IMG/VR virus record: IMGVR_UViG_3300021964_000012
Coordinates: 1 to 64,000 of that record
Strand: one strand, 5' to 3'
Length of the DNA: 64,000 nt
In this document: piece after piece, positions 27,928 through 63,340 of the stretch
Layout of the letters: each line of letters starts with the position of its first letter
Position numbering within the stretch: the first letter of the stretch is position 1
Position numbers and translations under genes: made by a program
Notes under the pieces: model-generated
Seen by the model: only the letters and a program-made list of their open reading frames with translations
What the model was told of the DNA's origin: nothing
Databases searched by the model: none

Positions 27928-27942
27928 GCGATAACTACATTT

Positions 27943-29819: not shown

Positions 29820-31170
29820 GCAACCAAACGAGACTGATCTAGCATATAAAGAACGTGTACTTAATCCACTTAGTGATAGCATGTGTGGAGCCAAATGGTA
29901 TAATGCAACTATATGGTTAGGCTCAGGCATGACAACTAGTTGCCATCATCCACTTCCACATCATGTAAGTGTAGAGAATGTTATTGCTAATCCTAAGGCA
30001 CTACACAACACGCCACATAAAAAACATGAGCGTTTGCAGATGCAATATGGCGAGCGTCCAAAGGGTTGCGAGTATTGTTGGAAAGTAGAAGACATAGGCA
30101 GAGACAACATCAGTGATAGGGTTTACAAGAGTGTAATCTACGATGATGAAGCACTCAAACATGCCCATGAAACCGACCACAATGAGGACATAGACTTAAA
30201 AACACTAGAAATAGCATTTGATCGTACTTGTAACCTAGCATGCAGTTATTGTAATCCTGCTTTTAGCACCACATGGGTAAAAGATATAAAGAAGAACGGT
30301 GCATATCAAGGCCTCGTAAGCGATGGCCGCAATCATTTTACACATCCACATGATAGCTCGCAGTTGTATAGGTTCAACGAAACTAATCCTTACATCGAAG
30401 CGTTCTTTAAATGGTGGGAATCAGATCTGCACAGAACTTTACAAGAATTACGCATAACAGGTGGAGAACCAATGATGAGCGGACACCTGTGGAAACTATT
30501 AGACTGGTTCAAAGAAAACAAAGGCGCAAGTAAAACACGCATTGCTATCAACAGTAATCTACAGTGTAGCACAGATGATATAGAAAAACTACTTGATCGG
30601 GCTGATAGTGCTCCGCTGGACATTTATACAAGTAACGAAAGCATAGTAGATCAAGCAGAATACATACGTGATGGACTTGACTGGAACACATGGCAGACAA
30701 ACTTTGAAATGTTGGCCTCAAGCAATAAGTTACGTGGTTTGCACAACATGTGTACAATTAATGCATTGTGTTTGGAGTCATTGCCAGAATTTTTAGATTA
30801 TTTACTGAATATAAAAGCAAAATATGGCAGAGACTTTCCTAGTTTTACACTTAATATACTTCGATTTCCTAGTTTTCAAAGTGCATTAGCATTACCTGAC
30901 CAAATACGCTCGGCATACAAAGATCGATTACAACATTGGTTTGATCTCAATGTAGACAACAAACTATTTCATGAACATGAACTTAATCAAACACAACGTT
31001 TATTAGATTACTTAGATGTAGTTAAAACTCCGCACAGTGAAGCATTTGAGACACCAAAACTACACAACGACTTTGTAAAATTTTATACACAGTATGATAT
31101 CAGACGTAATAAAAATTTTAATAAAGTATTTCCAAGTATGAAAGAATGGTTTAATGAGTTACAACTATAA
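29812..31170 (+). CDS. Radical SAM enzyme, N-terminal SPASM/twitch (subfamily A)
   Basis: CGAKW..SCHHP..CEYCW; CNLACSYC; TGGEP; likely TTG start at 29812 with GGAG at 29801. Confidence 0.85.
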   Translation: MPKQPNETDLAYKERVLNPLSDSMCGAKWYNATIWLGSGMTTSCHHPLPHHVSVENVIANPKALHNTPHKKHERLQMQYGERPKGCEYCWKVEDIGRDNISDRVYKSVIYDDEALKHAHETDHNEDIDLKTLEIAFDRTCNLACSYCNPAFSTTWVKDIKKNGAYQGLVSDGRNHFTHPHDSSQLYRFNETNPYIEAFFKWWESDLHRTLQELRITGGEPMMSGHLWKLLDWFKENKGASKTRIAINSNLQCSTDDIEKLLDRADSAPLDIYTSNESIVDQAEYIRDGLDWNTWQTNFEMLASSNKLRGLHNMCTINALCLESLPEFLDYLLNIKAKYGRDFPSFTLNILRFPSFQSALALPDQIRSAYKDRLQHWFDLNVDNKLFHEHELNQTQRLLDYLDVVKTPHSEAFETPKLHNDFVKFYTQYDIRRNKNFNKVFPSMKEWFNELQL

Positions 31171-32437
31171 CAGTAGCGATCCAATAAAAATAAAACTAAG
31201 TGACTTAGAAGAACGTGAACGTTTCTTATTAAGTGAAAGCAAGACTTTTTGCATGTATCCATGGATACACTTACATGCATATCCAACTGGTGAAGCATAT
31301 CCTTGTTGTCATGCTGAAATGGGTGTAGGACAGGTAGGCAACTGCAAAACAAATACAATGTTAGAAATTTGGAATAGCCCTGAACAAAAGAAACTACGTC
31401 AAGATATGTTAACTGAAACCAAAAATGACGCATGCGGAAGATGCTATGAACAAGAAGCATCAGGATTCTTTTCAGGTAGACAAAGTGCAAACAAGCATCA
31501 TGGACACCACATACACAGAACACAAGACACAACTGTCGAGGGTGAGTATAAAGATTTTGAAATGACCTATTGGGATATACGTTTTTCAAACTTGTGTAAT
31601 CTAAGTTGTCGGAGTTGTGGACATATATTTTCTAGTAGTTGGCATAAAGACCAGACTGCTCTTGCTGGCCCCGAATGGGCAAAAAATAACAAGGTGTTAA
31701 ACTATGCAGGACGGTTTAAAACTGATATGATGGAACAGTTAATGGAGCATCTTGACTATGTAGAACAAATATACTTTGCTGGTGGTGAACCACTGATGAT
31801 GGATGAACACTATGTGATACTTGAAGAGCTTGAACGTAGAGGCCGTTTTGATGTGCGACTCATTTACAATACAAATTTTACGCATGTTCAACTTAAAGAA
31901 AGATTGGTTTTTGATTATTGGAAAAAGTTTGACAGTGTAGCAGTTGGTGCAAGTTTGGATGCAATGGGTCCTCGTGCTGAGTACATACGTAAAGGCGCCA
32001 AATGGGACATAGTTGAACAAAACAGACATAAAATGATGGAAATATGTCCAAAGGTTGACTTTTATATTTCACCAACACTTAGTATCATGAATGCCTTGCA
32101 CATACCAGACTTTCACAGAGACTGGGTAAACAAAGGATTGCTTCAAGCACAGGATCTAAACATCAATATATTACAAGATCCTAATTACTATAGAATTGAC
32201 ATTGCACCACAAGCGTACAAAGATCAAATCGTTGATGCGTATGAGAAACATCTTGTTTGGTTACGCCCACAAGATAAACTAAACAGAGCAACTGTTGGTT
32301 TTGAAAGTGCATTACAGTATTTAAAAACAGACAACACGCACTTGTTGGAAAAATTTTGGCAAAAGACTCAACAACTTGATGGCATTCGCAATGAAAATAT
32401 TCTTGACATTATACCAGAATTGGATGCATTAAAGTGA
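31154..32437 (+). CDS. Radical SAM enzyme, N-terminal SPASM/twitch (subfamily B)
   Basis: CMYPW..PCC..CGRC; CNLSCRSC; AGGEP. Confidence 0.9.
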   Translation: MSYNYNSSDPIKIKLSDLEERERFLLSESKTFCMYPWIHLHAYPTGEAYPCCHAEMGVGQVGNCKTNTMLEIWNSPEQKKLRQDMLTETKNDACGRCYEQEASGFFSGRQSANKHHGHHIHRTQDTTVEGEYKDFEMTYWDIRFSNLCNLSCRSCGHIFSSSWHKDQTALAGPEWAKNNKVLNYAGRFKTDMMEQLMEHLDYVEQIYFAGGEPLMMDEHYVILEELERRGRFDVRLIYNTNFTHVQLKERLVFDYWKKFDSVAVGASLDAMGPRAEYIRKGAKWDIVEQNRHKMMEICPKVDFYISPTLSIMNALHIPDFHRDWVNKGLLQAQDLNINILQDPNYYRIDIAPQAYKDQIVDAYEKHLVWLRPQDKLNRATVGFESALQYLKTDNTHLLEKFWQKTQQLDGIRNENILDIIPELDALK

Positions 32438-37889: not shown

Positions 37890-39395
37890 ATGAGAATACT
37901 AGGAGTTAGTGCAGGATTCCACGATGCCGCTCTTACTGTGGTACACAATCACAGAATACTGTTTGCAGGTCATGCTGAACGATATAGCAAAAAGAAAAAC
38001 GATCCTACTATTCCTCAAAGTCTTCAAGAACACGTTCTTAAATATGGACCTTTTGACATGATAGTCTACTATGAAAAGCCATATCTAAGACAACTGCGTA
38101 AAATTAAAAGTGGCGAAAATTGGGGAGGTGCTTGGCGTACACGTACCGAACTCGTACGTACAATTCCTTATATAATGGAAAACACCAAAGCAGAAATAAG
38201 CAGTGTTGGACATCATCTATCGCATGCGGCCGCAGGCTTTCAAACATCACCATTCGATGATGCAACAGTAGTTGTTATTGATGCAATAGGTGAGTCGGAT
38301 ACTATAAGCATATACCACGCCTACTACAATGGTGCATGTTTAGCAGGTGAACATGCTAAGGCAAATTACAAACTATTATACAAACAAACCTATCCACACA
38401 GTATTGGTATGTTCTACAGTGCAGTTACACAACGTTGTGGACTGAAGCCAATGGACGAAGAGTACATCACAATGGGCATGGCCGCATATGGGGATGCCGA
38501 CAAGGCATACAAAACATTAAAACGTGCAACTGTACAATTCGCAGATATTCCACTGTTTAAAGAAAACCTACACATAGGTATTGATGATGTTGAGTTTGCA
38601 CCTGATGTTACTGCTGAAGACATAGCTGCCGCAGGACAACAGTTATGCGAAGAAATGGTTATGGCTGTAATGCGTAGGGCAAAGGCCATTGGCACTAGTA
38701 AAAATCTAGTGTACATGGGAGGAGTTGCACTTAACTGTGTGATCAATCGTCGATTGGGTGAACTGTTTAACAAAATATGGATAATGCCCAACCCAGGAGA
38801 TGCAGGAAGCAGTTTGGGAGCCGCGGCCTACACATATGGTAGAGACATAAACTTTACAACACCATACTTGGGCTCAAATATAGCAGGTGAATATCCAGTG
38901 GATGAACTGTTAAAAGAATTAGAAACAAATCAAATTGTTGGAGTCGCAAATGGACGTGCAGAATTTGGTCCAAGAGCGTTAGGTAACAGAAGTTTACTAG
39001 CCGATCCGCGTGGACGAAATATCAAGGATCGAGTGAATGAGATAAAACGTAGACAAAAGTTTAGACCGTTTGCTCCTGTGATACTTGAAGAACATGTGCA
39101 TGACTATTTTGTAATGCCTCTTTATCAACCCACAAGTCGCTACATGCAGGTAGTAGCACGTTGCACAAAGCCAGATAAGTTTCCTGCTATTATACACGTA
39201 GATGGCACATCAAGAGTACAAACAGTTCCTGACAATGATAGTGGTATAAGACGGTTGTTGAGTGCGTGGTATAAAAAAACCGGTTGTCCTATGTTGTTGA
39301 ATACCAGTTTAAACATAAGAGGCGAGCCAATGGTTGATGATAGATTTGATGCTAATCGCTTTCAAAAAGAGTATGGAGTAACTGTATGCAGTTAG
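37890..39395 (+). CDS. O-carbamoyltransferase, NodU/CmcH family
   Basis: GFHDAA..ERYSKKKND, HHLSHAAAGF, GGVALNC, PGDAGSSLG, RAEFGPRALGNRS, FRPFAP, LLNTSLN. Confidence 0.92.
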   Translation: MRILGVSAGFHDAALTVVHNHRILFAGHAERYSKKKNDPTIPQSLQEHVLKYGPFDMIVYYEKPYLRQLRKIKSGENWGGAWRTRTELVRTIPYIMENTKAEISSVGHHLSHAAAGFQTSPFDDATVVVIDAIGESDTISIYHAYYNGACLAGEHAKANYKLLYKQTYPHSIGMFYSAVTQRCGLKPMDEEYITMGMAAYGDADKAYKTLKRATVQFADIPLFKENLHIGIDDVEFAPDVTAEDIAAAGQQLCEEMVMAVMRRAKAIGTSKNLVYMGGVALNCVINRRLGELFNKIWIMPNPGDAGSSLGAAAYTYGRDINFTTPYLGSNIAGEYPVDELLKELETNQIVGVANGRAEFGPRALGNRSLLADPRGRNIKDRVNEIKRRQKFRPFAPVILEEHVHDYFVMPLYQPTSRYMQVVARCTKPDKFPAIIHVDGTSRVQTVPDNDSGIRRLLSAWYKKTGCPMLLNTSLNIRGEPMVDDRFDANRFQKEYGVTVCS

Positions 39396-50279: not shown

Positions 50280-50453
50280 TTATTTTTCCATAAAGCAGGC
50301 AGTTTCTGGATCATTCCATTCTAATTCATACTTGCTACGTATAAACCAATCTCTTGGACATGCCCATTCTGGTGCATCACTATAGTCATGATTGGTTACT
50401 TCTTCTAAACAAGTGATTTCTTCGAGATCTAAATGGTCAGGATCATGAATCAT
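50280..50453 (-). CDS. Small acidic protein, 57 aa
   Basis: MIHDPDHLDLEEI..; the longer 131-aa call overlaps the VWA gene, so the start was moved to 50453. Confidence 0.5.
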   Translation of the reverse strand: MIHDPDHLDLEEITCLEEVTNHDYSDAPEWACPRDWFIRSKYELEWNDPETACFMEK

Positions 50454-51705
50454 CTTCGTATAGTGCCCATGTACCAAAGGGCGGATTAGGATTCTTATCG
50501 CCATGTATAATAAAAACTGTATCACAGTAGTTAGGATCGCCCCATGAATCAAATGGATAACCATCTGTAAACATAACCAATCTTTTAGGATCAATACCTT
50601 CTTCTTTAAGGTAGTCAAACACACAATCAAAGTCAGTACCACCACCACCTTTGATCTCGTACTCGTCGATAGCATCTATGTTATCGTCAGTAAATGTTTG
50701 TACATTATAAACACTAGTATCAAAACAACATATAGTAACACGGAACTGCCCATACTCTTCCATAATTCCTTTGACTTCACTCATAAAGTCTCTACCTTGC
50801 TCTGCGCCAATTGAACCACTCATGTCTAATGCACAAAAGATATCAACATATTCGTCGTTGTCCATACCTGGAAGTATAGCATCCATGTGCCAGCCCTTAC
50901 GATGCATACGTTTAAATGTGTAGTCAGACTTGATAGTTGACTGCATCTGCATACGTAACAGTTCTCTCCAGTTTAATTTAGGCTCGGTGAGTTGTGCAAC
51001 AATACGTTTTACCCCTGCTGGTACGTTGCCAGGATCTGATGCCTGTGCGGCACTCAGCATGGCTTCTTTTATTTCTTCTTTAATCTTTTCACGTTCTTCT
51101 TTTGAATATTTTGTAGGTCCTTTACCTTCTTCGTCATTGTCGCCATCACCTTCTTTACCATCCAAGTGCTGATCAATCAACTGTTTTACAAGCTCATCCA
51201 TATCGATCTTATCAGCATTCTCATAAAGGTCGTCATATACTTCTTCTGAACTCCAACCTTCATACTTAACATCATACAAACATGGAACAGTCTTAATAAA
51301 CTCGCCTACTCTGTGTTTTTGTAGATCAGCATTTACACAATAGTCAGCAGCTATGTTGTGCAACTGAGGATCTCTGTCACCACGTCTACCAAAATGATCA
51401 TATACACAATGCAATACTTCATGTCCAAAAAGAAATTCAACTTCTTTAGGACGTAGCATTTTAATAAACTTTGAATTGTAGTAGAAGTTTCTACCATCAG
51501 TTGCGGCAGTTGCACACCATTCATCAGCATTGACTAGTTTCAATCTAGTAGCAAGGTTACCAAAAAAACTAGCACGTAACAACATACCAACACGGGCAGT
51601 AATTAATATTTCACGTACTTCTCTATCACGTGCAGGATCCATTGGACCTAGTATATCTTTAAATTTGTCTGCTAAGTCTTTGTTTACTGTTGTATCTTGC
51701 GACAT
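50443..51705 (-). CDS. HExxH metallopeptidase-like + VWA domain protein (DUF2201-type)
   Basis: TAATDG, HEVLH, DMSGS (MIDAS), GGGGTDF, FTDG. Confidence 0.88.
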   Translation of the reverse strand: MSQDTTVNKDLADKFKDILGPMDPARDREVREILITARVGMLLRASFFGNLATRLKLVNADEWCATAATDGRNFYYNSKFIKMLRPKEVEFLFGHEVLHCVYDHFGRRGDRDPQLHNIAADYCVNADLQKHRVGEFIKTVPCLYDVKYEGWSSEEVYDDLYENADKIDMDELVKQLIDQHLDGKEGDGDNDEEGKGPTKYSKEEREKIKEEIKEAMLSAAQASDPGNVPAGVKRIVAQLTEPKLNWRELLRMQMQSTIKSDYTFKRMHRKGWHMDAILPGMDNDEYVDIFCALDMSGSIGAEQGRDFMSEVKGIMEEYGQFRVTICCFDTSVYNVQTFTDDNIDAIDEYEIKGGGGTDFDCVFDYLKEEGIDPKRLVMFTDGYPFDSWGDPNYCDTVFIIHGDKNPNPPFGTWALYEDDS

Positions 51706-51735: not shown

Positions 51736-51765
51736 ATTGTAACACATATTGTGAAAGTGTCAACC
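51736..51765 (-). promoter_or_regulatory. Early sigma70-type promoter GGTTGACA-16-TACAAT (TGn extended)
   Basis: -35 at 51758-51763, -10 at 51736-51741, followed by GTATATACAGTTAGAAA and AGGAG. Confidence 0.8.
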
Positions 51766-52862: not shown

Positions 52863-53957
52863 TTATCCTTGACTAGCAAGTATGTACTTGCCATAACGTT
52901 GATGAAACTCATCAAAGTTTTTAAGTTTAGTAGGTTGAAACGGAATAGCATATGTTGTCAATGCAATCCTTGCACCCATAACAACCAACTCAGTTTCAAA
53001 GTTATCCATCATAAACCTAAAGAAGTTATCACTCATCTTGTGAAACTCAGCATCTTTAACAGTTGCTAATGCTTCTTTAAGCTCATAACACATACTAATA
53101 GTAAGTGAATACATTGCACTAACTTCTTGCACATCCAGTTTGCTAACCTTACCAGCAAGCACATCTGTTGGATTAGGAAGTTTACCAGCAATCTTTCTGT
53201 GTGCTTGAAACTTAACTGCAAGACCTTCACCAATGGTACCAGCAATCAGATCAGTTGCAGTGGTTTCCGTCATGTCCTCTTCAATAAGTTCGCTTACAAA
53301 ACTCCATGATCTTGGAGTAGCAAAAGCTCTACTTGCACTCTTTGCATCAAAATCATACAAGTCCTGTTTAGCAAAACTCAAGTAACCTACTACATCAGGA
53401 TGTATACCATTTTCAACGGCCCAATCAAACCATGCTTCATAGTCTGCACGTATCTCTACGTGTACAAATCTATTTGCAAGTGGAGTAGGCATTCTAAAGG
53501 TAACACCTTTGTCTGACTCTCTGTTACCAGCGGCAATAATAACCACATTGTCCGGCAATACATACTTGCCTAATCTTCTGTTAAGCACCAACTGGTAAGC
53601 GGCGGCTTGTACACTAGCAGGTGCACTATTCATTTCATCCAAGAATACTGTGATCATTGGATAGTCTTTGGCAAATTCTGGTGATGGAAGATCAATAGGC
53701 GGAGCCCAATCCATTACGCCTAGTTCTTTGTTGAAGTAGGGCATACCTCTAAGGTCTGTTGGATCCATTTGACCTAAACGTAAATCAAACATATAACCTC
53801 CAGCATCATTGGTAATCTGCTGAACTATATCTGACTTACCAACACCTGGAGGTCCCCATAAAAATATTGGTCTTTGTTTTTTGAATGCTACTTTAATTGC
53901 ACTTTTTGCACCAGCAGTAGTAACTGTTCTGTATTCAATTTGACTTGAACTTGACAT
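52863..53957 (-). CDS. MoxR-like AAA+ ATPase
   Basis: GPPGVGKS (Walker A), VFLDEMN (Walker B), AAGNR, LANRF, TPRSW. Confidence 0.9.
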   Translation of the reverse strand: MSSSSQIEYRTVTTAGAKSAIKVAFKKQRPIFLWGPPGVGKSDIVQQITNDAGGYMFDLRLGQMDPTDLRGMPYFNKELGVMDWAPPIDLPSPEFAKDYPMITVFLDEMNSAPASVQAAAYQLVLNRRLGKYVLPDNVVIIAAGNRESDKGVTFRMPTPLANRFVHVEIRADYEAWFDWAVENGIHPDVVGYLSFAKQDLYDFDAKSASRAFATPRSWSFVSELIEEDMTETTATDLIAGTIGEGLAVKFQAHRKIAGKLPNPTDVLAGKVSKLDVQEVSAMYSLTISMCYELKEALATVKDAEFHKMSDNFFRFMMDNFETELVVMGARIALTTYAIPFQPTKLKNFDEFHQRYGKYILASQG

Positions 53958-53988: not shown

Positions 53989-54018
53989 ATAGTAACACAG
54001 GATTATATTATGTCAACC
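53989..54018 (-). promoter_or_regulatory. Early promoter GGTTGACA-16-TACTAT
   Basis: -35 at 54011-54016, -10 at 53989-53994; 27/28 nt shared with the VWA promoter-leader. Confidence 0.8.
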
Positions 54019-55383: not shown

Positions 55384-55567
55384 TTGCTTTTTCCCATTCT
55401 TTTTCAAATCTATCTAGTGTACAAGGCAGTCTTTCGCAGTTGCCCCATAGCCTTTTGATGTATGCTCGTTCCATACGTTCAATGTCTGACACATTCCATG
55501 AATCTGGAATTAATTGTCCTTTTACTGCAAACATTAATTCATTTTGAAACCGATTACCGTTTGGCAT
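55376..55567 (-). CDS. Hypothetical protein
   Basis: Likely start MPNGNRF at 55567, coupled to neighbours. Confidence 0.5.
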   Translation of the reverse strand: MPNGNRFQNELMFAVKGQLIPDSWNVSDIERMERAYIKRLWGNCERLPCTLDRFEKEWEKANG

Positions 55568-55766
55568 ATAAATTCTCCCAATATTTAAGTCTATCTGCCC
55601 AAGGTGTGCGATTTTTATCGTGTTCAATTAACTTTTTCATGTAGTGTGCATGGCCACCGTCCCATGGTGTTTTAGTACCAAATCCACATTTCAGCTGATA
55701 TATCTGCAAGCCGTCATCATCATATTCCCACAATCGAAGATCAGGATCTAGTTCAATTTCATTCAT
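55554..55766 (-). CDS. Hypothetical protein
   Basis: 70-aa ORF with ATGA coupling. Confidence 0.55.
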   Translation of the reverse strand: MNEIELDPDLRLWEYDDDGLQIYQLKCGFGTKTPWDGGHAHYMKKLIEHDKNRTPWADRLKYWENLYAKR

Positions 55767-55870
55767 AGTTGATCCTTAAAAATAACAAACACTCCAATGA
55801 TTTGTAGCATTAGAAACACAAACGTGAAAAGCAGTTGTCCTAGTAATTCACGAAGTTCATCTCTTTTCAT
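55763..55870 (-). CDS. Small membrane protein, 35 aa
   Basis: MKRDELRELLGQLLFTFVFLMLQIIGVFVIFKDQL fills the gap. Confidence 0.5.
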   Translation of the reverse strand: MKRDELRELLGQLLFTFVFLMLQIIGVFVIFKDQL

Positions 55871-55878
55871 TGTGATAT

Positions 55879-56478
55879 TTATTTCTTCTGTTGTGACCGT
55901 TCAAACATTTGACTAACCAATGGCAAACTTACTGGATGTTCACTACAACGTTGTGTACCTTCAATGGTGCTTTCAATCAAGAATGCAGTCTCTGGTGGTT
56001 CTTGCCCCATTGGGCAACTACATACAGCCAATCCGTTTTTGTCTATTTTGCAGTTCCAACTGAAGCAATTACTTGCTCGATGTCCTTGTTTGAGGCTGGC
56101 TGGACATTCAACAATGTTTCCTCTCATTTTTTCTGTGTTATGAGAAAAATCATTTTGTTGTCTTGGATAATCAGCTCTTGGCCAAAACGTACTCCATACT
56201 GAATTTTCGCCTGTTGGTTCACAACTTGTCATGTTTCCTGCACTTAGATCAGCTATGTTATCACCAAATAATATAGGACAAGTACATTTCACTTCTGGAA
56301 ATGATTCTCCAGATTGATTGGTAATTGTTCCACCTGTTGGTTTGCATGCACTAGCGGCACACAATGCAAATTGTCCATGACATATGGTAATACCTTTATC
56401 TGCAAATGCAGAAGCACTCCAAAGAAGTGCAAGCAGTGTAACTAAGAATATTCTAATGTTAAATTTATGTATTTTCAT
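55879..56478 (-). CDS. Secreted cysteine-rich protein
   Basis: Signal peptide ending SASAFA; 12 Cys in the mature part. Confidence 0.7.
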   Translation of the reverse strand: MKIHKFNIRIFLVTLLALLWSASAFADKGITICHGQFALCAASACKPTGGTITNQSGESFPEVKCTCPILFGDNIADLSAGNMTSCEPTGENSVWSTFWPRADYPRQQNDFSHNTEKMRGNIVECPASLKQGHRASNCFSWNCKIDKNGLAVCSCPMGQEPPETAFLIESTIEGTQRCSEHPVSLPLVSQMFERSQQKK

Positions 56479-56972
56479 TCATGTTCTCCCCCGGGATCAT
56501 TTTTATCTAACTTGATTTTTTCACCGTTCACCCACATATAGCCTCTACTTCTGCTTGGTGTGTGATATCCATTGTTTAAAAAGAAACTGGGCTTACGTTT
56601 TGCAGTCTCAAATATCACAACTGTTGCAACAATACCTGCAATTAACAATGTGTGTGCTACTGCGGTATAGGCAAATACTGTTAAACTGCCCAAGCCCATG
56701 CTAAAAATAATACACCACATCCATGCTAATACCTGCATGACCATGTGTCTTACATTTGTGTCTGGAATAGCACTAAGAGGATTTCGTCGATCATCCATTA
56801 TACTATTCCAACAACTAACAATCCATTCTTTCATCGGATAAACTCCTTTTTCAAATGTCACTTTTATTGGATAATTTGCATCGACAACATCTTTGAAATC
56901 AATTGCATCATATCTTGAATTAAAATATTGCACAATTTTTGTTTCACGCCAATAGCCTGTGACTCTATACAT
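56475..56972 (-). CDS. Membrane protein
   Basis: NPLSAIPD..RHMVMQVLAWMWC, two hydrophobic segments. Confidence 0.65.
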   Translation of the reverse strand: MYRVTGYWRETKIVQYFNSRYDAIDFKDVVDANYPIKVTFEKGVYPMKEWIVSCWNSIMDDRRNPLSAIPDTNVRHMVMQVLAWMWCIIFSMGLGSLTVFAYTAVAHTLLIAGIVATVVIFETAKRKPSFFLNNGYHTPSRSRGYMWVNGEKIKLDKNDPGGEHE

Positions 56973-57230
56973 TTAGTTATCAAGGATGGGGTCTGTTTCT
57001 TTAGGAAAATGCTGTCGATATTTGTTTACCATCAACTCTCTATTTTCTTCAATTGATATCAGCCCTGCTTCAATTTCCCTAAGAGCAGTCATTCCTCTTT
57101 TGTTAAAATGCGGAGTCAATGGCTGATTGTCAGCACTGTAACTTCTTGCTCTTGTGGATGCAGCCATAATTAAATCATATCTACTTCCGCCTACGTTTTT
57201 TGTGCCTTTGGTATTACTGATTCTTGCCAT
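56973..57230 (-). CDS. RNA polymerase omega-subunit-like protein
   Basis: SRYDLIMAASTRAR...MTALREIEAGLI resembles RpoZ helices 1-3. Confidence 0.7.
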   Translation of the reverse strand: MARISNTKGTKNVGGSRYDLIMAASTRARSYSADNQPLTPHFNKRGMTALREIEAGLISIEENRELMVNKYRQHFPKETDPILDN

Positions 57231-57420
57231 TGATATTGTACCTTTTTATTGTTTCAGTTGTCATAATTCCACTGCGGAAGTTTTCCACTGCGTCTTCAAC
57301 ATAATGCATACTATGGTCACTGTAATCAATTAAACCTAGTAATCTGTTGTCTTCATAAAACTCGACATAGTGCTTGTTGCCGACTTTTTTAAACTTTGTA
57401 TCTCGATTTTCTAAATACAT
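57214..57420 (-). CDS. Hypothetical protein, 68 aa
   Basis: GGAGGT SD before MYLENRDTK; start moved to 57420. Confidence 0.65.
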   Translation of the reverse strand: MYLENRDTKFKKVGNKHYVEFYEDNRLLGLIDYSDHSMHYVEDAVENFRSGIMTTETIKRYNINGKNQ

Positions 57421-57433
57421 ATTACCTCCAATA

Positions 57434-57619
57434 CAATGCAGAGTGTTGCACATGTTTAAGGACCCTCTCATGATCTAAACGGGAGGTGCTGTGTGTCACC
57501 TCCGACCAGGTCCGCCTGATATTCTAACAAGAGATCTAGGCTCCCGTACCTCTTTGCAACTAGGGGGCTGGGGACATAAGTTTTACCTTCTTGCCCACCT
57601 CTTTCCAAACCCTGCACTG
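57434..57619 (-). ncRNA. Candidate structured RNA, about 186 nt, multibranch
   Basis: GC-rich intergenic; closing helix CAGUGCAGGG/CUCUGCAUUG, helix GUUGCA/UGCAAC, hairpins GGAGGUG/CACCUCC and CAGG-CGGA-CCUG. Confidence 0.6.
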
Positions 57620-57625
57620 TAAACC

Positions 57626-57850
57626 TTAGTCTTTTCTAATGTTTTTTAACTTGTTTAGTTCGTAACTTTCACTGAGCCACCAAACCAACATTCCAAAACA
57701 TGCCGCAATGCCAAAACCTGTTACAACCTGTTGTGCTTCAAACCCATATGTATTCGCTATGTATATTAAACCACGTACGGCGGCTAAAACTACAGCAGTT
57801 GCAATTGCAATTATGGCTAGTCTTGACACAATATATTTTGTTTTTTCCAT
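57626..57850 (-). CDS. Small membrane protein
   Basis: 74 aa, two hydrophobic helices, AAGGA SD. Confidence 0.65.
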   Translation of the reverse strand: MEKTKYIVSRLAIIAIATAVVLAAVRGLIYIANTYGFEAQQVVTGFGIAACFGMLVWWLSESYELNKLKNIRKD

Positions 57851-57886
57851 TTTAAGTTCCTTTTCTGTTTTCTAACTTTATAATGT

Positions 57887-57917
57887 ATATTAACACTATA
57901 TATTGTGTCTGTCAACC
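57887..57917 (-). promoter_or_regulatory. Early promoter GGTTGACA-17-TAATAT
   Basis: -35 at 57910-57915, -10 at 57887-57892, downstream GTTAGAAA. Confidence 0.7.
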
Positions 57918-57929
57918 ACTATTTGCATA

Positions 57930-58367
57930 TTATTTGCGAAATTTTAATGTGTGTTGCTTTCCATTTCCATCAGTAAAAGTAATTGTACTGTGTGAATAAA
58001 TATCATTCTGCTGAACTTCGTTGTATCTGGTTTGATAACTACACTGTCTTTGTACACCACCTCTAGCATCACTGTTCATGTTGCCCAATAACCCACCTAG
58101 TATAGCACCAGCAGTGCCACCATCAGGCATGTTTTTGGTTACATTGTTACCAATGATACCACCAATGATTGCACCTCTTAGTGTGTCGTGTGTTCTATCA
58201 CCACCAATTGAAACATCTTGACATACTTCAACCTGATATGGTTGTTGTTTGATTATGCTTTTGTAATGGTCTCTAATTACACCATTTGTATTAGAATCAA
58301 ATGCTTGTACTGGTAATGCGACTAGTGCTAAAGCAGTACTTGCAATGGCAATGTTTAATAGTTTCAT
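57930..58367 (-). CDS. Secreted glycine-zipper 2TM protein (YcfJ-like)
   Basis: Signal peptide; GAIIGGIIGN..GAILGGLLGN. Confidence 0.75.
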   Translation of the reverse strand: MKLLNIAIASTALALVALPVQAFDSNTNGVIRDHYKSIIKQQPYQVEVCQDVSIGGDRTHDTLRGAIIGGIIGNNVTKNMPDGGTAGAILGGLLGNMNSDARGGVQRQCSYQTRYNEVQQNDIYSHSTITFTDGNGKQHTLKFRK

Positions 58368-58397
58368 GTAAATAACTCCTTATCAATTAATATACTT

Positions 58398-58427
58398 ATA
58401 ATAGCATCTATTTACAGTATGTCAACC
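58398..58427 (-). promoter_or_regulatory. Early promoter GGTTGACA-16-TATTAT
   Basis: -35 at 58420-58425, -10 at 58398-58403 with TGn. Confidence 0.75.
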
Positions 58428-58440
58428 TTTTTTTATAAAA

Positions 58441-58593
58441 TGGTAGCCGCCACCTAACCTCGCCAACTACCTTGTGCAACACAGAACGTTACACCCCGAC
58501 TCTCAGTATACCTCTCCTGAGACTTGTCAAGGCGAAAGACATAGTCGGTTCACAGCGAGGGTAACGCAATAATTGAATATACTATGTCTTTAC
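58441..58593 (-). ncRNA. Candidate structured RNA, about 150 nt, rod-like, ending ..GGCUACCA
   Basis: GC-rich intergenic; helices CCUCGCUG/UGGCGAGG, CCUUG/CAAGG, UCUCAG/CUGAGA; alternative 11-bp AAAGACAUAGU/ACUAUGUCUUU; TAAGTA at 58599-58604. Confidence 0.5.
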
Positions 58594-58604
58594 AAATTTA
58601 CTTA

Positions 58605-60473
58605 TCACCAGGTAATCTGGACACCTGCAGAAATGACATTAGTATTACCTAAGTCTGTCATTGATCTGTTTGCTTCGACTCTAAAAGTTATATTTTCATT
58701 AACTTTCTCAAGTCCGACTGCAATATCATTTACACCATCTGTGTGATGCAATACTGTGAAATCAACTGGACCTAGATCTCCTTTTAGACCTACAGTTGCA
58801 TAGCCATAGTTATCAGTATCATTTGCTACTGTTCTAAGACTTTGTACTGAACCTGTTTCTGTGTATCCACTTACTTTTTTCTTACCTTTTGTTAATCCAA
58901 CAATAGGACGAAACTTTTCATTTGTTGGGCTAAAACTTACACTGATTGAAGTATCTGTTCCATTAGTATCCGCAGTGTTTGAGAAATCACCAATAATACG
59001 TGACACATCATAGTCTGTCATTGCGTGTTTCAGGCCTATTGTAACATCACCCTGTGTGACTTTTTTGCCTACATTTACACCCAGTACATTTGTTTTAGCA
59101 GTAACAGTATCATCATTGCCTTTTAGACTAGTGCTAAATTTTGCAGCACCTAATGCTATAGCATAACCTGTGTCATTGTTTATTTTACTAGCACCCAATA
59201 CTGCACCTTTTGTAGTACCAGTTAGTCCACCACTCATTTTACTATCCATAGCAATTGCTTTTGGACCATCAAAAGTTAGGTTGCGTATTGCAGTACTTGT
59301 AACATCTTGTGCTGATGCAACCTGATCTATACGTCCTGTAAAAGGAGTAAGAGTTTCTACTGTTGTACCTGTTAGTGTGTTTGTACCATCATCATAAACA
59401 TCAAATGTACTGGTAGTTTTTTCTCTAGCAATAGTTTGTATCTTAGCAGTTTCTGATGCAGTGTGACTTGTAACACTTGATGTTGCAGTTCCTATTTTAG
59501 TTGGGCCACTTGCAGCATCTGTTGCTGATCCTTCATCATTGACATCACCCCAGTCACTAGGTGTTTCGCCTGCAGTTCCACCACCTGCACCGCCTTCGAT
59601 AGCAGTATCAGCGGCACCAAAAGCACTAGGACCAAAAATGTAAGCATATTCGGCAGTTAAAATATCACCTGCACTTACGCCTGTCCAATGCCAAGTTAAA
59701 CCAATAGTATGATCACCATTGCCATAATTTACACTATTACCATCACTATCTGTGTAAGGTGATCCTGTGTAACCGTCTGCTTCTGTTGTCCAACCATTGC
59801 TAATACCAGCATCAACATTAGAGTTTGTTGAATATAAACCTAATGCATAACGACTTGTTGTTGCCTCACTAAATGCAACGTTGCTATCAGGGATACCTGA
59901 ATAACCTAGCACGTTATCTGTAGCACTTGTATCACCTGCTTCTGGCATAGCATCTGGATCTATGAATCGTCCAAAATAAACGTCATCTGCTGCACCACCT
60001 GCAGTAATATTTGTTGTGATATCAACATATTCACTTGTAGTACCTAAACTATAGATGTTTTCTATTTCCCAACCTGTGTGTGCAGTGTTTGTACCGTTCC
60101 AAGTAAATGTATTAGTACCGTCTGTAAGTCCATCACTGTCTGTCCATGCGTTGGAACCCGAATTGTTGTTTGTGCTATTTGTTCCGTCAATTTTTAAAGC
60201 AAAGCCATCAAACGGTGATCCTGGTGTTAAGTAGTCGCCCTGCTCACTGTCTCCAGGAAATGTTCCTGAACCTGTTGAATCATACTGTAGTCCTGGTCTT
60301 GTGCCACCGCCAGAACCAAATGTACCACTAGTACCATTTACGCCTGCACGTACATAATCATTTTCAAGTATACCCATGCCTGTTACACTGGTATTCATAC
60401 TTGATGTATCCGACAACGCCGTTGTTGTCATCAATGCAGTCAAGACTGCACCGACTAATAAAGTTCTTTTCAT
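58605..60473 (-). CDS. Autotransporter/outer-membrane beta-barrel-like protein
   Basis: Signal peptide, G/T/D/S-rich passenger, alternating beta-strand C-terminal region ending in Trp. Confidence 0.6.
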   Translation of the reverse strand: MKRTLLVGAVLTALMTTTALSDTSSMNTSVTGMGILENDYVRAGVNGTSGTFGSGGGTRPGLQYDSTGSGTFPGDSEQGDYLTPGSPFDGFALKIDGTNSTNNNSGSNAWTDSDGLTDGTNTFTWNGTNTAHTGWEIENIYSLGTTSEYVDITTNITAGGAADDVYFGRFIDPDAMPEAGDTSATDNVLGYSGIPDSNVAFSEATTSRYALGLYSTNSNVDAGISNGWTTEADGYTGSPYTDSDGNSVNYGNGDHTIGLTWHWTGVSAGDILTAEYAYIFGPSAFGAADTAIEGGAGGGTAGETPSDWGDVNDEGSATDAASGPTKIGTATSSVTSHTASETAKIQTIAREKTTSTFDVYDDGTNTLTGTTVETLTPFTGRIDQVASAQDVTSTAIRNLTFDGPKAIAMDSKMSGGLTGTTKGAVLGASKINNDTGYAIALGAAKFSTSLKGNDDTVTAKTNVLGVNVGKKVTQGDVTIGLKHAMTDYDVSRIIGDFSNTADTNGTDTSISVSFSPTNEKFRPIVGLTKGKKKVSGYTETGSVQSLRTVANDTDNYGYATVGLKGDLGPVDFTVLHHTDGVNDIAVGLEKVNENITFRVEANRSMTDLGNTNVISAGVQITW

Positions 60474-60927: not shown

Positions 60928-61884
60928 TTAATCAGGAAAGCTACTAATAGAATCTTTTTTCTTATTTGTTGCACTGATTTTTTCATTTGTATTATCTGTC
61001 GTGTGTGCTGGACAAAACTTACACTGTGGAATCACATCATCAATACCATCAATGAACTCTTTTCCTCTTTGTGCAAATTCGTGTACACTAAGTGGATGAT
61101 AGTTGTGCAGTAACTGTCTGTCTTCTTCGGTTATATCAAAATTATGTTGTAAATCAAATTCTGGAAACAACCCAACCGGACCGCATTTGTAGAGTTTTGC
61201 TCTAATAAAATGATGACATTGAAACTGTACAAAGCCACATGCATTATGTGCTTGCTGAGGATCACTTTGGAATAGTGTGAATTTTCCGTTTTCGTTTTTT
61301 TGTACGGCACTTGTATAAAACTCATCCTGTAACCAATAATGAATTTTTACATGATTGTTATCTGTTAGTGCATAGTGACTTTCGTTTGTGATTTCTCCAT
61401 TGGAGAGTTGTCTTACTCCTGAACCTTGAAGAAACTTTTTGCCTTCTTCTAAGTGTCGGTCTAGATCATTCTCGTTATGAACACTTACGCCAATCCAGTT
61501 CTTTTCCTCGTTATGGGTACCAGTGTAATTATTCAGCACATCATACAAGCCTGAAACATGATTTATTCTCACACCATTGGTGAGTATCTGTACTGGTTTA
61601 TTCCACAACCTGTTAATGCCATTTACCCAATCACATATAGTTGGATTAAGCAATGGTTCACCTCCAAGAATAGTCACTTTTTGTAGGCGTATCTTTCCTG
61701 CCCATGCGGTGTACTCTGCTTCATAGTCAGTCCATTTTTGATAACCACTAAAAGCATGATTGTTGAATCGGTTACAGTTTGAGCACGTTAAATTGCACAC
61801 ATTGGTAATATAAAATTCAATGTTAGGTACATATGTGCGAGGATCATCAGGATGTTCATCTGGAAAGTGTTTTGGGTATCTCAT
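60928..61884 (-). CDS. Radical SAM enzyme with C-terminal Cys cluster
   Basis: CNLTCSNC, ILGGEP, C..C..KC..CKFC; start MRYPK at 61884 with TAAGTA 4 nt upstream. Confidence 0.85.
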   Translation of the reverse strand: MRYPKHFPDEHPDDPRTYVPNIEFYITNVCNLTCSNCNRFNNHAFSGYQKWTDYEAEYTAWAGKIRLQKVTILGGEPLLNPTICDWVNGINRLWNKPVQILTNGVRINHVSGLYDVLNNYTGTHNEEKNWIGVSVHNENDLDRHLEEGKKFLQGSGVRQLSNGEITNESHYALTDNNHVKIHYWLQDEFYTSAVQKNENGKFTLFQSDPQQAHNACGFVQFQCHHFIRAKLYKCGPVGLFPEFDLQHNFDITEEDRQLLHNYHPLSVHEFAQRGKEFIDGIDDVIPQCKFCPAHTTDNTNEKISATNKKKDSISSFPD

Positions 61885-61902
61885 AGTGTACTTAGTAAAA
61901 AA

Positions 61903-61978
<76 letters not shown>

Positions 61979-61998
61979 ACGATTCACCTTTTTACTTA

Positions 61999-63066
61999 TT
62001 AATCGTTATTTGGATAAACTCTTTCTAAGAGTTTTGAATAAGCATTTGCAATAGTTTTTTCATTTATAGCAGGTCCTATTGTTTTATTATCAATTATACA
62101 TGTCCATACGTATGCTAGATAATTCAGTACAATTGAAGGATTTTGTCCGTACCCAATATCATATGGTAAAGCATTATGTGTGCCAACAGGATTATAAACA
62201 TTTGCCTCACATAAACGATCAACTTCTTTACCACTGAAAGTTGTAATATCATAATCTTTAAGTTGGAAGTTTGCCAGTTCTTCTACAATTGCAATCCAGC
62301 GATCAGAACAATCCATGGCCTTTCCTGCTAACATTGCTATACCAGAGCATACCTGCACATGAAAGTGTCCGCGTCCAGGTGCATCTAGTTTATCCATATA
62401 AGATAATTCATCTGCAACCATTGCAACTTGATCAAATATATCATGGACTCCTGGTGTCTGAAAGTAACTTTTGCCTCCATAAGGAGCAGAAACATTAAGT
62501 GCACCACCTATTTGTCCTTTTTTAACTTTGAAGTTAGTAAAACGATTTAACAGGTTATTGGCACGAAATGCACTTGTGATCTTATCTGCTTTGGTTTCAA
62601 CTGCATCCATACTATCAATAATACCATATAATTTACATGCTTCGTATGCATCATCTACTTCGTATACTCTAACTGATACTTGTTCTGGTATAGGAAGTGT
62701 TTTGACATTGTTATTAACCACTTGATTTTCAATGTAGTGTTTCTTCCATGCATATTGTCTAGTATTACCGTCTAGTACATATGTTGTATCTTTTCTAAAA
62801 AATGCTGGCTTACTTGTGGTTTCACCGGTATAATGAAGTAGGTCAACTTCAGCATGTTTATACATTGGAGTTACAAAACGTGTGGCGGCCCTTTTGGCAC
62901 GACGTTCAACGTCTCGGTTAGCTGGAAATGTTGGAATTTTTAAAAAATCATCAAGTTTCATAATACTAGCAAGGTCTTTAGACATTGGAAACTTTTTTAT
63001 TTCATAAGTTTTTTCTTCGTTAACGTCAAATAGGTCGTTAGTGACCAGCTCTAGATTTTTGTTCAT
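61999..63066 (-). CDS. Hypothetical protein, possible ParB/Srx-like N-terminus
   Basis: NRD..R and VLDGNTR motif; likely start MNKNLE with AAGGA SD. Confidence 0.55.
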   Translation of the reverse strand: MNKNLELVTNDLFDVNEEKTYEIKKFPMSKDLASIMKLDDFLKIPTFPANRDVERRAKRAATRFVTPMYKHAEVDLLHYTGETTSKPAFFRKDTTYVLDGNTRQYAWKKHYIENQVVNNNVKTLPIPEQVSVRVYEVDDAYEACKLYGIIDSMDAVETKADKITSAFRANNLLNRFTNFKVKKGQIGGALNVSAPYGGKSYFQTPGVHDIFDQVAMVADELSYMDKLDAPGRGHFHVQVCSGIAMLAGKAMDCSDRWIAIVEELANFQLKDYDITTFSGKEVDRLCEANVYNPVGTHNALPYDIGYGQNPSIVLNYLAYVWTCIIDNKTIGPAINEKTIANAYSKLLERVYPNND

Positions 63067-63102
63067 AGTTTTTTCCTTGTTCTCAAACAATGTTAATGTA
63101 TC

Positions 63103-63180
63103 GTTAACCGCAGTTAACTTACACTTTAGTTATTCAACCAAGATTGTCTTGGTTAAAATTCTATACACAACGTATAGAAT
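63103..63180. repeat. Three adjacent inverted repeats
   Basis: GTTAAC-cgca-GTTAAC; AACCAAGA-ttg-TCTTGGTT; ATTCTATAC-acaac-GTATAGAAT. Confidence 0.8.
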
Positions 63181-63183
63181 ACT

Positions 63184-63257
63184 TGGCAGAGGACCAAGGA
63201 GTCGAACCCTGGCTTAGTGGGTTGGAGCCACTCGTGCTACCGTAACACTTGTCCTCT
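63184..63257 (-). tRNA. tRNA-Trp(CCA)
   Basis: AGAGGAC/GTCCTCT acceptor, AGTGG-CTCCAAC-CCACT anticodon arm, GTTCGACTC, encoded CCA. Confidence 0.9.
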
Positions 63258-63263
63258 ATAATT

Positions 63264-63340
<77 letters not shown>

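What the first reader, a model, noticed from the sequence alone, without database searches (positions are those of the whole stretch)
56973..57230. Phage-encoded RNA polymerase omega-like subunit
Seen: SRYDL...A..RAR and TALREIEAG, the two conserved RpoZ segments. Known: omega binds beta-prime and forms ppGpp site 1 in proteobacteria. Inference: swapping in a phage omega could desensitise RNAP to the stringent response or bias sigma choice. It lies within 1.4 kb of two structured-RNA candidates.
Basis: partly seen in the sequence, partly recalled or inferred. Interest (0 to 1): 0.62.

Follow-up and report, generated by a model that had tools for sequence, protein, structure and literature searches.

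The report
Jumbo phage carries its own RNAP omega
An uncultured 328-kb marine phage that has no RNA polymerase of its own encodes a conserved, diverged copy of omega, the smallest subunit of the bacterial enzyme, probably to fit or maintain the host polymerase it depends on; I found no published report of a phage omega.

Summary
Window 56973-57230 (-) is an 85-aa ORF that passes the curated cut-offs of Pfam RNA_pol_Rpb6 (32.9 bits, cut-off 26) and TIGR00690 rpoZ (29.4, cut-off 23.6). It aligns colinearly from Met1 with E. coli omega. Its AF2 model (pLDDT 82) finds only RNAP omega chains among its top 50 PDB matches.

The record is a complete 328,292-bp T4-related jumbo phage, with a Gp23 capsid and a gp6-like baseplate. 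No beta, beta' or T7-type RNAP was detected.

Omega sits in a minus-strand operon behind two sigma70-type promoters. It is under purifying selection (dN/dS 0.02-0.2). It occurs in all three complete or near-complete genomes of an uncultured aquatic phage clade that I checked, but not in five cultured distant relatives. Phage omegas group together and are at most 49-55% identical to any cellular omega sampled.

The most likely mechanism is that it binds host beta' as a substitute or extra omega. A co-fold with E. coli beta' fragments gave only weak support (0.56 against best control 0.16).

The ppGpp-contacting N-terminus MAR(I/V)S is invariant in this marine subclade, and site 1 is the lesser ppGpp site. 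Some sister freshwater phage omegas do alter that N-terminus. Four full-text searches found no paper on a phage-encoded omega.

The parts
56973..57230 (-). rpoZ-like gene: 85-aa omega homologue (MARISN...GGSRYDLIMAASTRARS...MTALREIEAGL... plus a phage-specific C-terminal helix and acidic tail)
   Evidence: dN/dS 0.02-0.2.
57887..57915 (-). Sigma70-type promoter-like site, TTGACA-17-TAATAT with TG extended -10. It lies 37 nt upstream of ORF 57626-57850 and is the nearest candidate promoter of the operon that holds omega.
   Evidence: It belongs to a genome-wide class of which 25 of 55 sites fall in the 5.5% of the genome that is intergenic.
58398..58425 (-). Second sigma70-type promoter-like site, TTGACA-16-TATTAT (11 of 12 matches, TG), 31 nt upstream of the Gly-zipper gene.
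57626..57850 (-). First gene of the unit: a 74-aa hydrophobic (membrane-type) protein.
   Evidence: Syntenic in relatives.
57472..57625 (-). GC-rich conserved intergenic element inside the operon, upstream of omega. Possibly a structured RNA; unproven.
57214..57471 (-). Small ORF immediately upstream, overlapping the omega start by 17 nt. The true start is probably the Met of MYLENRD, which follows a GGAGG, giving about 68 aa. No family hit. It is linked to omega only in the window's subclade.
56475..56972 (-). 165-aa membrane-type ORF whose ATG abuts the omega stop (TAA-ATG). It sits at this position only in the window's subclade.
55879..56478 (-). 199-aa Cys-rich protein with a signal peptide. 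It is the one neighbour next to omega in all three marine subclades with flanking sequence (63-94% identity).

Best explanation
The ORF encodes a true but strongly diverged homologue of the bacterial RNA polymerase omega subunit (RpoZ). It is fixed as a gene of an uncultured aquatic clade of T4-related jumbo phages that have no RNA polymerase of their own. Shown: family membership, omega-like predicted fold, phage location, conservation under purifying selection, and position behind sigma70-type promoters. Inferred: it is made early by host sigma70 holoenzyme and then binds host beta' at the normal omega site, replacing or supplementing host omega. There it would keep beta' folded and assembled and the elongating enzyme stable and processive through a long infection in which the host core enzyme must read both the early sigma70-type and the T4-late-type (ATAAATAC) phage promoters. 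It would also expose phage-specific surfaces (residues 5-16 and the conserved C-terminal helix and tail) that could retune regulation or dock phage factors. Because MAR(I/V)S is invariant in this subclade, the ppGpp site-1 half contributed by omega is probably kept rather than destroyed.
For: Family membership: PF01192 at 32.9 bits (cut-off 26) and TIGR00690 at 29.4 bits (cut-off 23.6).
Alignment: colinear with E. coli omega over residues 1-60.
Fold: AF2 model with pLDDT 82 and helices 7-13, 17-29, 45-54, 60-70. All top 50 Foldseek PDB hits are omega chains, with TM-score by query length 0.51-0.59 and probability 0.98-1.00.
Phage context: G000 is a 328,292-bp record with direct terminal repeats and 100% CheckV completeness. 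It has a Gp23 capsid at 332 bits and a gp6-like baseplate 33-35% identical to Atu_ph07, 121Q, GAP32, CBB and SCTP-2.
No own RNAP: PF00623, PF00562, PF04997, PF00940 and Sigma70_r2 all gave nothing. Group 2 jumbo phages are described as relying on host RNAP (PMC7824862).
Promoters: 25 of 55 TTGACA-N16-18-TAnnnT sites lie in the 5.5% intergenic DNA, two of them upstream of omega. 32 of 58 TAAATAC sites (extended consensus ATAAATAC) lie within 60 nt upstream of gene starts, including the baseplate genes.
Selection and distribution: dN/dS 0.02-0.2. There are 93 protein clusters at 62-93% identity in marine metagenomes. Omega is present in G001 (353 kb, complete), G003 (316 kb) and G004 (300 kb).
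Phylogeny: phage omegas form one group, supported 100/100 against 64 cellular sequences and SH-aLRT 83 in the joint tree.
Co-fold: with E. coli beta' 335-660 plus 1135-1407, ipSAE was 0.56 against a best control of 0.16, the tool's 'weak support'. That mark was reached by 51 of 78 solved complexes and 2 of 108 mismatched pairs, but scores of 0.60 or under came from only 5 of those 78 solved complexes and from all 4 mismatches that passed. Runs agreed in at least 56% of contacts and partner pLDDT was at least 67.
Known omega roles: beta' folding and assembly latch (PMC7700224); processivity and resistance to termination (PMC13192885).
Against: Binding to host beta' has not been shown. The co-fold pass is weak, used E. 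coli rather than the unknown host, and may reflect the model's memory of solved RNAP structures.
The host already has omega, and omega is dispensable in E. coli, so the benefit of an extra copy is not obvious.
The marine subclade has lost parts of the canonical first conserved region: GNRF has become GGS(R/Q/P)(Y/F). One relative scores below the Pfam cut-off, at 23.6 bits. The surface has therefore changed and the partner could differ.
The host is unidentified.
Highly divergent phiKZ-type RNAP subunits might escape the Pfam models, although this phage belongs to the T4-like group, which lacks them.
Confidence: 0.6

Rival explanations
1. Stringent-response bypass: phage omega replaces host omega and abolishes or weakens ppGpp site 1, so that phage transcription continues in starved, ppGpp-rich marine hosts.
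For: Omega contributes residues 2-5 to site 1, and omega lacking residues 2-5 loses ppGpp binding (PMC7676912). The residues after MAR differ from cellular omegas: SN..G..GGS against TVEDAV..GN. Freshwater phage omegas carry N-terminal extensions or substitutions (MTESRARY, MTDSRVQY, MAK) that would displace the N-terminus. The genome also carries a MazG.
Against: M1-A2-R3-(I/V)4-S5 is invariant across all three marine subclades despite 45-50% overall identity, which is the opposite of what loss of the site predicts. Site 2 (DksA) dominates the response and is untouched, and delta-rpoZ has mild phenotypes. No DksA/TraR or RelA/SpoT homologue was found in the genome.
Confidence: 0.12
2. Adaptor omega: the phage-specific surfaces (residues 5-16 and the C-terminal helix and acidic tail) make omega a docking site for a phage activator or late-transcription factor, as GafA uses omega to activate RcGTA genes.
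For: A natural activator works through direct contact with omega (PMC9638019). The C-terminal 60-85 region is conserved within subclades and predicted helical. The small ORF 57214-57471 is translationally linked to omega in the window's subclade.
Against: No partner has been identified. The linked small ORF is absent from the other subclades. The C-terminal tail differs between subclades. This reading is compatible with the best explanation rather than exclusive of it.
Confidence: 0.13
3. Poison omega for host shut-off: like the dominant-lethal 'structured' E. coli omega mutants, it binds core more tightly and makes RNAP defective in sigma70 initiation while still competent for elongation. This would switch off host and early transcription.
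For: Such mutants exist, cluster near the third conserved region and the C-terminus (for example N60D), are more helical and bind more tightly (PMC7700224). In the phage protein the segment after the third conserved region is a confidently predicted helix, 60-70.
Against: The phage needs the same core enzyme throughout, since no RNAP of its own was found. It has about 25 sigma70-type promoters of its own. There is no direct evidence of toxicity.
Confidence: 0.08
4. Passenger or artefact: a recently captured host gene without function, or host DNA mis-assembled into a viral bin.
For: Phages often carry host-derived morons. The 'phage' hits in INPHARED were host rpoZ contaminants.
Against: The same gene in the same neighbourhood occurs on 16 IMG/VR contigs. 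dN/dS is 0.02-0.2. It is at most 49% identical to any cellular omega sampled and lies on a long separate branch. Its GC (38%) matches the genome (37.5%). The record is circularly closed and carries phage hallmark genes.
Confidence: 0.03

Closest known systems
Proteobacterial RNA polymerase omega subunit (RpoZ; Pfam PF01192, TIGR00690), e.g. E. coli omega in PDB 6ALF and 4JKR
   Same: Same length class (85 against 67-99 aa). It is colinear from Met1 and has the MAR N-terminus, the A..RAR motif and the ALREIE.G motif. It has the same four-helix arrangement, and the curated HMM cut-offs are passed.
   Different: It is encoded by a phage, not in the gmk-rpoZ-spoT context. It is only 33-49% identical to cellular omegas. 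MARVTVEDAV..GNRF is replaced by MARISN..G....GGS.(Y/F), and VIAL by MTAL. It has a distinct C-terminal helix and acidic tail. It sits on a long separate branch.
RPB6/RpoK-family subunits encoded by nucleocytoplasmic large DNA viruses (own knowledge, not tested here)
   Same: A virus-encoded member of the same small-subunit superfamily.
   Different: Those viruses encode the whole multisubunit RNAP, and the RPB6 homologue is one of its subunits. Here no beta or beta' is detected, so the subunit would have to join the host's enzyme.
Phage factors that re-programme host RNAP: T4 AsiA, Alc, Alt/ModA, gp33/gp55; phiKMV Rac (PMC7824862)
   Same: The presumed purpose is the same: adapting the host core enzyme to phage transcription in phages without an RNAP. 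T4-type late promoter-like motifs are present in this genome.
   Different: Those factors are phage inventions or enzymes that bind or modify alpha, beta, beta' or sigma. This one is a homologue of a core subunit itself. The survey of 224 jumbo phages does not mention omega.
GafA-omega activation of the Rhodobacter gene transfer agent (PMC9638019)
   Same: It shows that omega can be the contact point for control of phage-like genes.
   Different: There the omega is the host's own and the regulator is GTA-specific. Here the omega itself is viral, and no regulator has been identified.

Membership tests
RpoZ / RNA_pol_Rpb6 (bacterial omega) | Sequence match to the curated family models above their cut-offs | tested here: met
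   PF01192 at 32.9 bits (cut-off 26). TIGR00690 equivalog at 29.4 bits (cut-off 23.6). The narrower model NF001579 was not reached: 18.5 bits against 58.
RpoZ / RNA_pol_Rpb6 (bacterial omega) | Conserved motifs of the first and second/third conserved regions (A..RAR and AL.EI) | tested here: met
   A24, R27-A28-R29 and A49-L50-R51-E52-I53-E54 are invariant in the 10-sequence marine alignment. Across all 41 phage omegas L20, A24, R27, R29, L50, E52 and E54 are invariant, and A49 and I53 are at least 90% conserved. The motif is named in PMC7700224.
RpoZ / RNA_pol_Rpb6 (bacterial omega) | Omega fold (helical latch) | tested here: met
   AF2 pLDDT 82 with four helices. All 50 best PDB matches are omega chains, with TM-score by query length 0.51-0.59. 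Foldseek E-values are weak (2.5e-3 at best) because the protein is small.
RpoZ / RNA_pol_Rpb6 (bacterial omega) | Binds beta' and is part of the core enzyme | tested here: inconclusive
   The co-fold with E. coli beta' fragments scored 0.56 against a best control of 0.16, the tool's 'weak support', and possibly reflects memory of solved RNAP structures. There is no biochemical test.
Proteobacterial ppGpp-site-1 omega (MAR-motif subgroup) | N-terminal M-A-R-x-T/S that coordinates the ppGpp phosphates | tested here: met
   MARIS in the window, and MAR(I/V)S in all marine relatives. The motif and its role come from PMC6416229 and PMC7676912. Actual ppGpp binding is not testable here.
Proteobacterial ppGpp-site-1 omega (MAR-motif subgroup) | ppGpp binding at the beta'-omega interface | not testable with these tools
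   Needs DRaCALA, crosslinking or in vitro transcription with hybrid RNAP.
Cellular rpoZ locus | Chromosomal context gmk-rpoZ-spoT (common in proteobacteria, not strictly defining) | tested here: not met
   The neighbours are small phage ORFs and envelope-type proteins. The Salmonella locus shows gmk-rpoZ-spoT.

The most novel reading that the evidence does not exclude
This is a 'subunit swap'. An abundant, uncultured aquatic lineage of jumbo phages that lacks any RNA polymerase encodes its own version of a core RNAP subunit. That version replaces host omega and converts the host enzyme into a phage-adapted form, with altered regulation by ppGpp or sigma competition, higher processivity, or a docking surface for phage factors. 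To my knowledge it would be the first phage-encoded core subunit meant to work inside a cellular RNAP.
Probability: 0.45. Interest if true: 0.8.

Novelty: new variant of a known kind. Interest (0 to 1): 0.68.

Why it matters
Omega is the least understood core subunit of bacterial RNAP. Its proposed roles are beta' chaperone, ppGpp site 1, sigma competition, processivity and activator target.

A virus that keeps its own omega under purifying selection, while depending on the host enzyme, is a natural experiment showing which of these roles is worth paying for during infection. The natural variation at the ppGpp-contacting N-terminus is informative too: it is kept in marine phages and altered in some freshwater ones.

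It would add a new class of host-takeover device, substitution of a core subunit, to the known binders and modifiers of RNAP. The phage clade is widespread: at least 597 IMG/VR contigs share its baseplate gene, and 93 omega protein clusters occur in ocean metagenomes. The effect could therefore matter for how large phages exploit slow-growing, nutrient-limited marine bacteria.

Tried and rejected
- Megablast of the region against INPHARED phages found no match.
- tblastn of omega against INPHARED returned only six hits, all enterobacterial rpoZ carried in contaminated or misfiled records.
- PHROGs gave no family for omega.
- The first genome-contig scan, with phage-only patterns, found nothing. 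The second needed a Salmonella omega in the alignment and is biased to [MV][TI]ALREIE-type omegas, so the donor lineage cannot be named.
- 'Relatives' cannot be drawn for a virus record.
- Host identification from omega phylogeny failed: long branch, 85-91 columns.
- Rfam at E<=1 over 55500-58800 found nothing.
- Terminase_6C was not found. This is uninformative, because jumbo-phage terminases are divergent.
- The T7-type RNAP search did not ring in any control genome, so its negative result is weak.
- PMC3654024 (Ross 2013) is not held; the site-1 residues are taken from PMC7676912 instead.
- Four full-text searches found no paper on a phage-encoded omega. A fifth search that required only three of its four terms returned papers without the omega phrase and says nothing either way. 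The library lacks most subscription journals.
- The large HMMER representative search was not run.

Full report
**1. The observation**

Window 56973-57230 on the minus strand is an 85-aa ORF, MARISNTKGTKNVGGSRYDLIMAASTRARSYSADNQPLTPHFNKRGMTALREIEAGLISIEENRELMVNKYRQHFPKETDPILDN.
- Pfam RNA_pol_Rpb6 matches residues 15-60 at 32.9 bits (gathering score 26, E 6.8e-8).
- NCBIfam TIGR00690 (rpoZ equivalog) gives 29.4 bits against a cut-off of 23.6.
- A six-frame scan of the whole genome finds only this place (E 2.9e-8).
- phmmer against PDB sequences finds E. coli omega first (E 3e-6), aligned from Met1 to residue 60 with two one-residue gaps.
- An AlphaFold2 model built on 41 phage homologues has pLDDT 82 and helices at 7-13, 17-29, 45-54 and 60-70.
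- All 50 best Foldseek matches in the PDB are omega chains of E. coli, Vibrio, Pseudomonas, Xanthomonas, Streptomyces and mycobacterial RNAP, with TM-score by query length 0.51-0.59.

**2. Where it lies**

The window is the first 64 kb of a 328,292-bp IMG/VR virus record with direct terminal repeats and 100% CheckV completeness. I measured 37.5% GC, a 105-bp terminal repeat, three tRNAs and about 94% coding density.
- It is a T4-related jumbo phage. It has a Gp23-type capsid gene (332 bits) and a T4 gp6-like baseplate wedge protein (phrog_10646, E 1e-283).
- That baseplate protein is 33-35% identical to those of Atu_ph07, Phosso, SCTP-2, 121Q, GAP32, CBB and Vibrio phage 2.275.O, which all infect Pseudomonadota.
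- No beta, beta' or single-subunit RNAP and no sigma70 region 2 was found.
- This agrees with the published description of 'group 2' jumbo phages as dependent on host RNAP (PMC7824862).

Two classes of promoter-like motif support that dependence.
- TTGACA-N16-18-TAnnnT, usually with a TGTG extended -10: 25 of 55 genomic sites fall in the 5.5% of the genome that is intergenic, mostly 23-43 nt upstream of minus-strand genes.
- A T4-late-like TAAATAC core (extended consensus ATAAATAC): 32 of 58 sites lie within 60 nt upstream of a gene start, including the baseplate genes at 1081, 1498, 18420 and 19090.

**3. The transcription unit**

Omega lies in a run of minus-strand genes. Sigma70-type sites sit at 58425-58398 (11 of 12 matches, TG) and 57915-57887 (10 of 12, TG), and the next one downstream is at 54016-53989.
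- The upstream small ORF (57214-57471) overlaps the omega start by 17 nt.
- The omega stop TAA is directly followed by the ATG of the next ORF.
- No late-type motif lies upstream.

I therefore infer early expression by host sigma70 holoenzyme.

**4. Conservation and spread**

- The word-index protein search found 93 clusters at 62-93% identity, all 53-90 aa long, from JGI, ENA, Logan and Tara ocean data. JGI's pipeline already labels several of them 'DNA-directed RNA polymerase omega subunit'.
- Sixteen IMG/VR contigs carry it, in three subclades that are 45-100% identical. All start with M-A-R-(I/V)-S-N and keep G14, G15, L20, I21, A24, R27, R29, P37, L38 and MTALREIE.
- Nei-Gojobori dN/dS is 0.02-0.2 for pairs whose synonymous sites are not saturated.
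- The 199-aa Cys-rich secreted protein is next to omega in every subclade for which downstream sequence is available, and a MoxR-like AAA gene lies 2-5 kb away. The other neighbours vary.
- The baseplate gene has at least 597 relatives in IMG/VR.
- PF01192 is present in all three complete or near-complete genomes of this clade that I checked: G000, G001 (352,754 bp, direct terminal repeats) and G003 (316 kb). It is also in G004 (300 kb, 86% complete) and G005.
- G001 carries a less derived omega (MARIVSEDAV..ENRFDLVLIASRR..; 46.3 bits). Its relatives lie on 13 further viral contigs of 35-51% GC. These have varied N-termini: MAR, MAK, MTESRARY and MTD(S/T)R(V/I)QY.
- One of those contigs (209 kb) has the same baseplate gene at 64% identity.
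- Five cultured distant relatives (Atu_ph07, Phosso, SCTP-2, Vibrio 2.275.O, 121Q) have no PF01192 match at E<=1.

**5. Origin**

The nearest cellular omegas found are 34-55% identical by best local segment, and at most 49% over the first 59 or more residues (Celerinatantimonas, Moritella, Colwellia, Psychromonas, Photobacterium, enterics). That scan was biased by its search pattern. G001's omega is 38-55% identical to Burkholderiales omegas.

In a tree with 64 proteobacterial omegas, the 22 marine phage sequences form one group (100/100) on a long branch. In a joint tree, all 19 phage omegas lie on one side of a branch with SH-aLRT 83. With only 85-91 alignment columns the donor cannot be named.

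The data fit one old capture followed by divergence within the phage lineage, and they exclude a recent host pick-up. The gene's GC (38%) matches the genome.

**6. Mechanism**

*What is known about omega.*
- It latches the N- and C-terminal parts of beta' and aids assembly. Delta-rpoZ RNAP recruits GroEL, and 'structured' omega mutants poison initiation (PMC7700224).
- Residues 2-5 help bind ppGpp at site 1, which has a smaller effect than the DksA-dependent site 2 (PMC7676912). The MAR motif marks ppGpp-binding omegas (PMC6416229).
- Omega raises processivity and resistance to termination (PMC13192885).
- It can be the contact of an activator of phage-like genes (PMC9638019).

*What I infer.* The phage protein occupies the omega site on host beta'. 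The co-fold with E. coli beta' 335-660 plus 1135-1407 scored ipSAE 0.56 against a best control of 0.16.
- The tool calls this weak support.
- That mark was reached by 51 of 78 solved complexes and 2 of 108 mismatched pairs. Scores of 0.60 or under came from only 5 of those 78 solved complexes and from all 4 mismatches that passed.
- The runs agreed in at least 56% of contacts and partner pLDDT was at least 67.
- The job was unlike the calibration, and a pass may come from the model's memory of solved RNAP structures.

Given the strong prior from homology, I put binding to beta' at about 0.7.

*Likely payoff.* The most likely benefit is a supply of omega that keeps the host core enzyme assembled and processive through a long infection of a 328-kb genome, which includes a 13.5-kb gene. 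Phage-specific surfaces may add regulation on top of that.

It stays open for the freshwater omegas with altered N-termini. No DksA/TraR or RelA/SpoT homologue is present. A MazG is present.

**7. Novelty**

Four full-text searches found no paper describing a phage-encoded omega. A fifth search, which required only three of its four terms, returned papers that lack the omega phrase and so says nothing either way. A comparative survey of 224 jumbo phages does not mention one. The library lacks most subscription journals, so this is absence in what I could search.

Automated JGI labels exist. I therefore rate it a new variant of a known kind: a clear RpoZ-family member in an unprecedented genetic setting, with a derived sequence.

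**8. Limits**

- The host is unidentified.
- Binding, ppGpp response and expression are untested.
- The trees rest on very few alignment columns.
- The promoter classes are consensus matches supported by their positions, not by transcript data.

Noticed in passing
window 58435-58600 (-): GC-rich intergenic element just after the stop of the 622-aa gene. It folds at -53.1 kcal/mol, better than all 200 shuffles (z -3.2), and ends in a terminator-like hairpin plus ATTTTAT. No Rfam hit at E<=1. Possible sRNA or structured 3' end.
   Followed up: partly
window 57472-57625 (-): GC-rich intergenic element inside the omega operon. Its folding energy is not unusual (z -0.2), but it is conserved in relatives, and 9 of 17 consensus pairs show compensatory changes.
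   Followed up: partly
G000 genome-wide; window examples 58398-58425, 57887-57915, 53989-54016, 51736-51763 (-): A strong sigma70-type promoter class, TTGACA-N14-TGTGTTAtaAT. 25 of 55 sites are intergenic, and nearly all are on the minus strand 23-43 nt upstream of a gene start.
   Followed up: yes
G000 genome-wide; window 1081, 1498, 18420, 19090 (+): A T4-late-like motif ATAAATAC with no -35 element. 32 of 58 TAAATAC sites lie within 60 nt upstream of gene starts, including structural genes. No gp55-like sigma was looked for.
   Followed up: partly
window 4933-18405 (+): A single 4,490-aa ORF directly after the gp6-like baseplate wedge gene (1522-4929). Not analysed.
   Followed up: no
window 58605-60473, 57930-58367, 55879-56478, 56475-56972 (-): Several envelope-type proteins cluster around omega: a 622-aa protein with a signal peptide and a C-terminal ...GVQITW (outer-membrane-barrel-like ending, no Pfam hit), a 145-aa Gly-zipper protein (PF05433), a 199-aa Cys-rich secreted protein that is always next to omega, and a 165-aa membrane protein.
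   Followed up: partly
window 26473-32437, 37890-39395, 60928-61917: Three radical-SAM-like ORFs in a row, a Nol-like carbamoyltransferase, and another radical SAM gene. Possibly a modification or biosynthetic module.
   Followed up: no
window 52863-53957 and 50443-51705 (-): A MoxR-like AAA ATPase, 80-98% identical across subclades and much more conserved than omega, lies near a DUF2201 metallopeptidase/VWA protein.
   Followed up: no
G000:143071-143268 (-): A MazG-family pyrophosphohydrolase (29.4 bits) preceded by a sigma70-type promoter site at 143447-143475.
   Followed up: no
L185, L187-L194, L196 (IMG/VR contigs, 35-42% GC): Phage omegas of a second type whose N-termini are not MAR: MTESRARY..., MTD(S/T)R(V/I)QY.... 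L195 has MAK. This is natural variation at the ppGpp-contacting end.
   Followed up: partly
window 61903-63340 (-): Three tRNA genes: Thr-TGT, Trp-CCA and Arg-ACG.
   Followed up: no
INPHARED records OR845831.1, OR851528.1, MG065691.1, MG065686.1: Records filed as phages (two very short, two Campylobacter phage genomes) contain an enterobacterial-type rpoZ identical in its match to Salmonella's. This looks like host or contaminant sequence rather than a phage omega.
   Followed up: no
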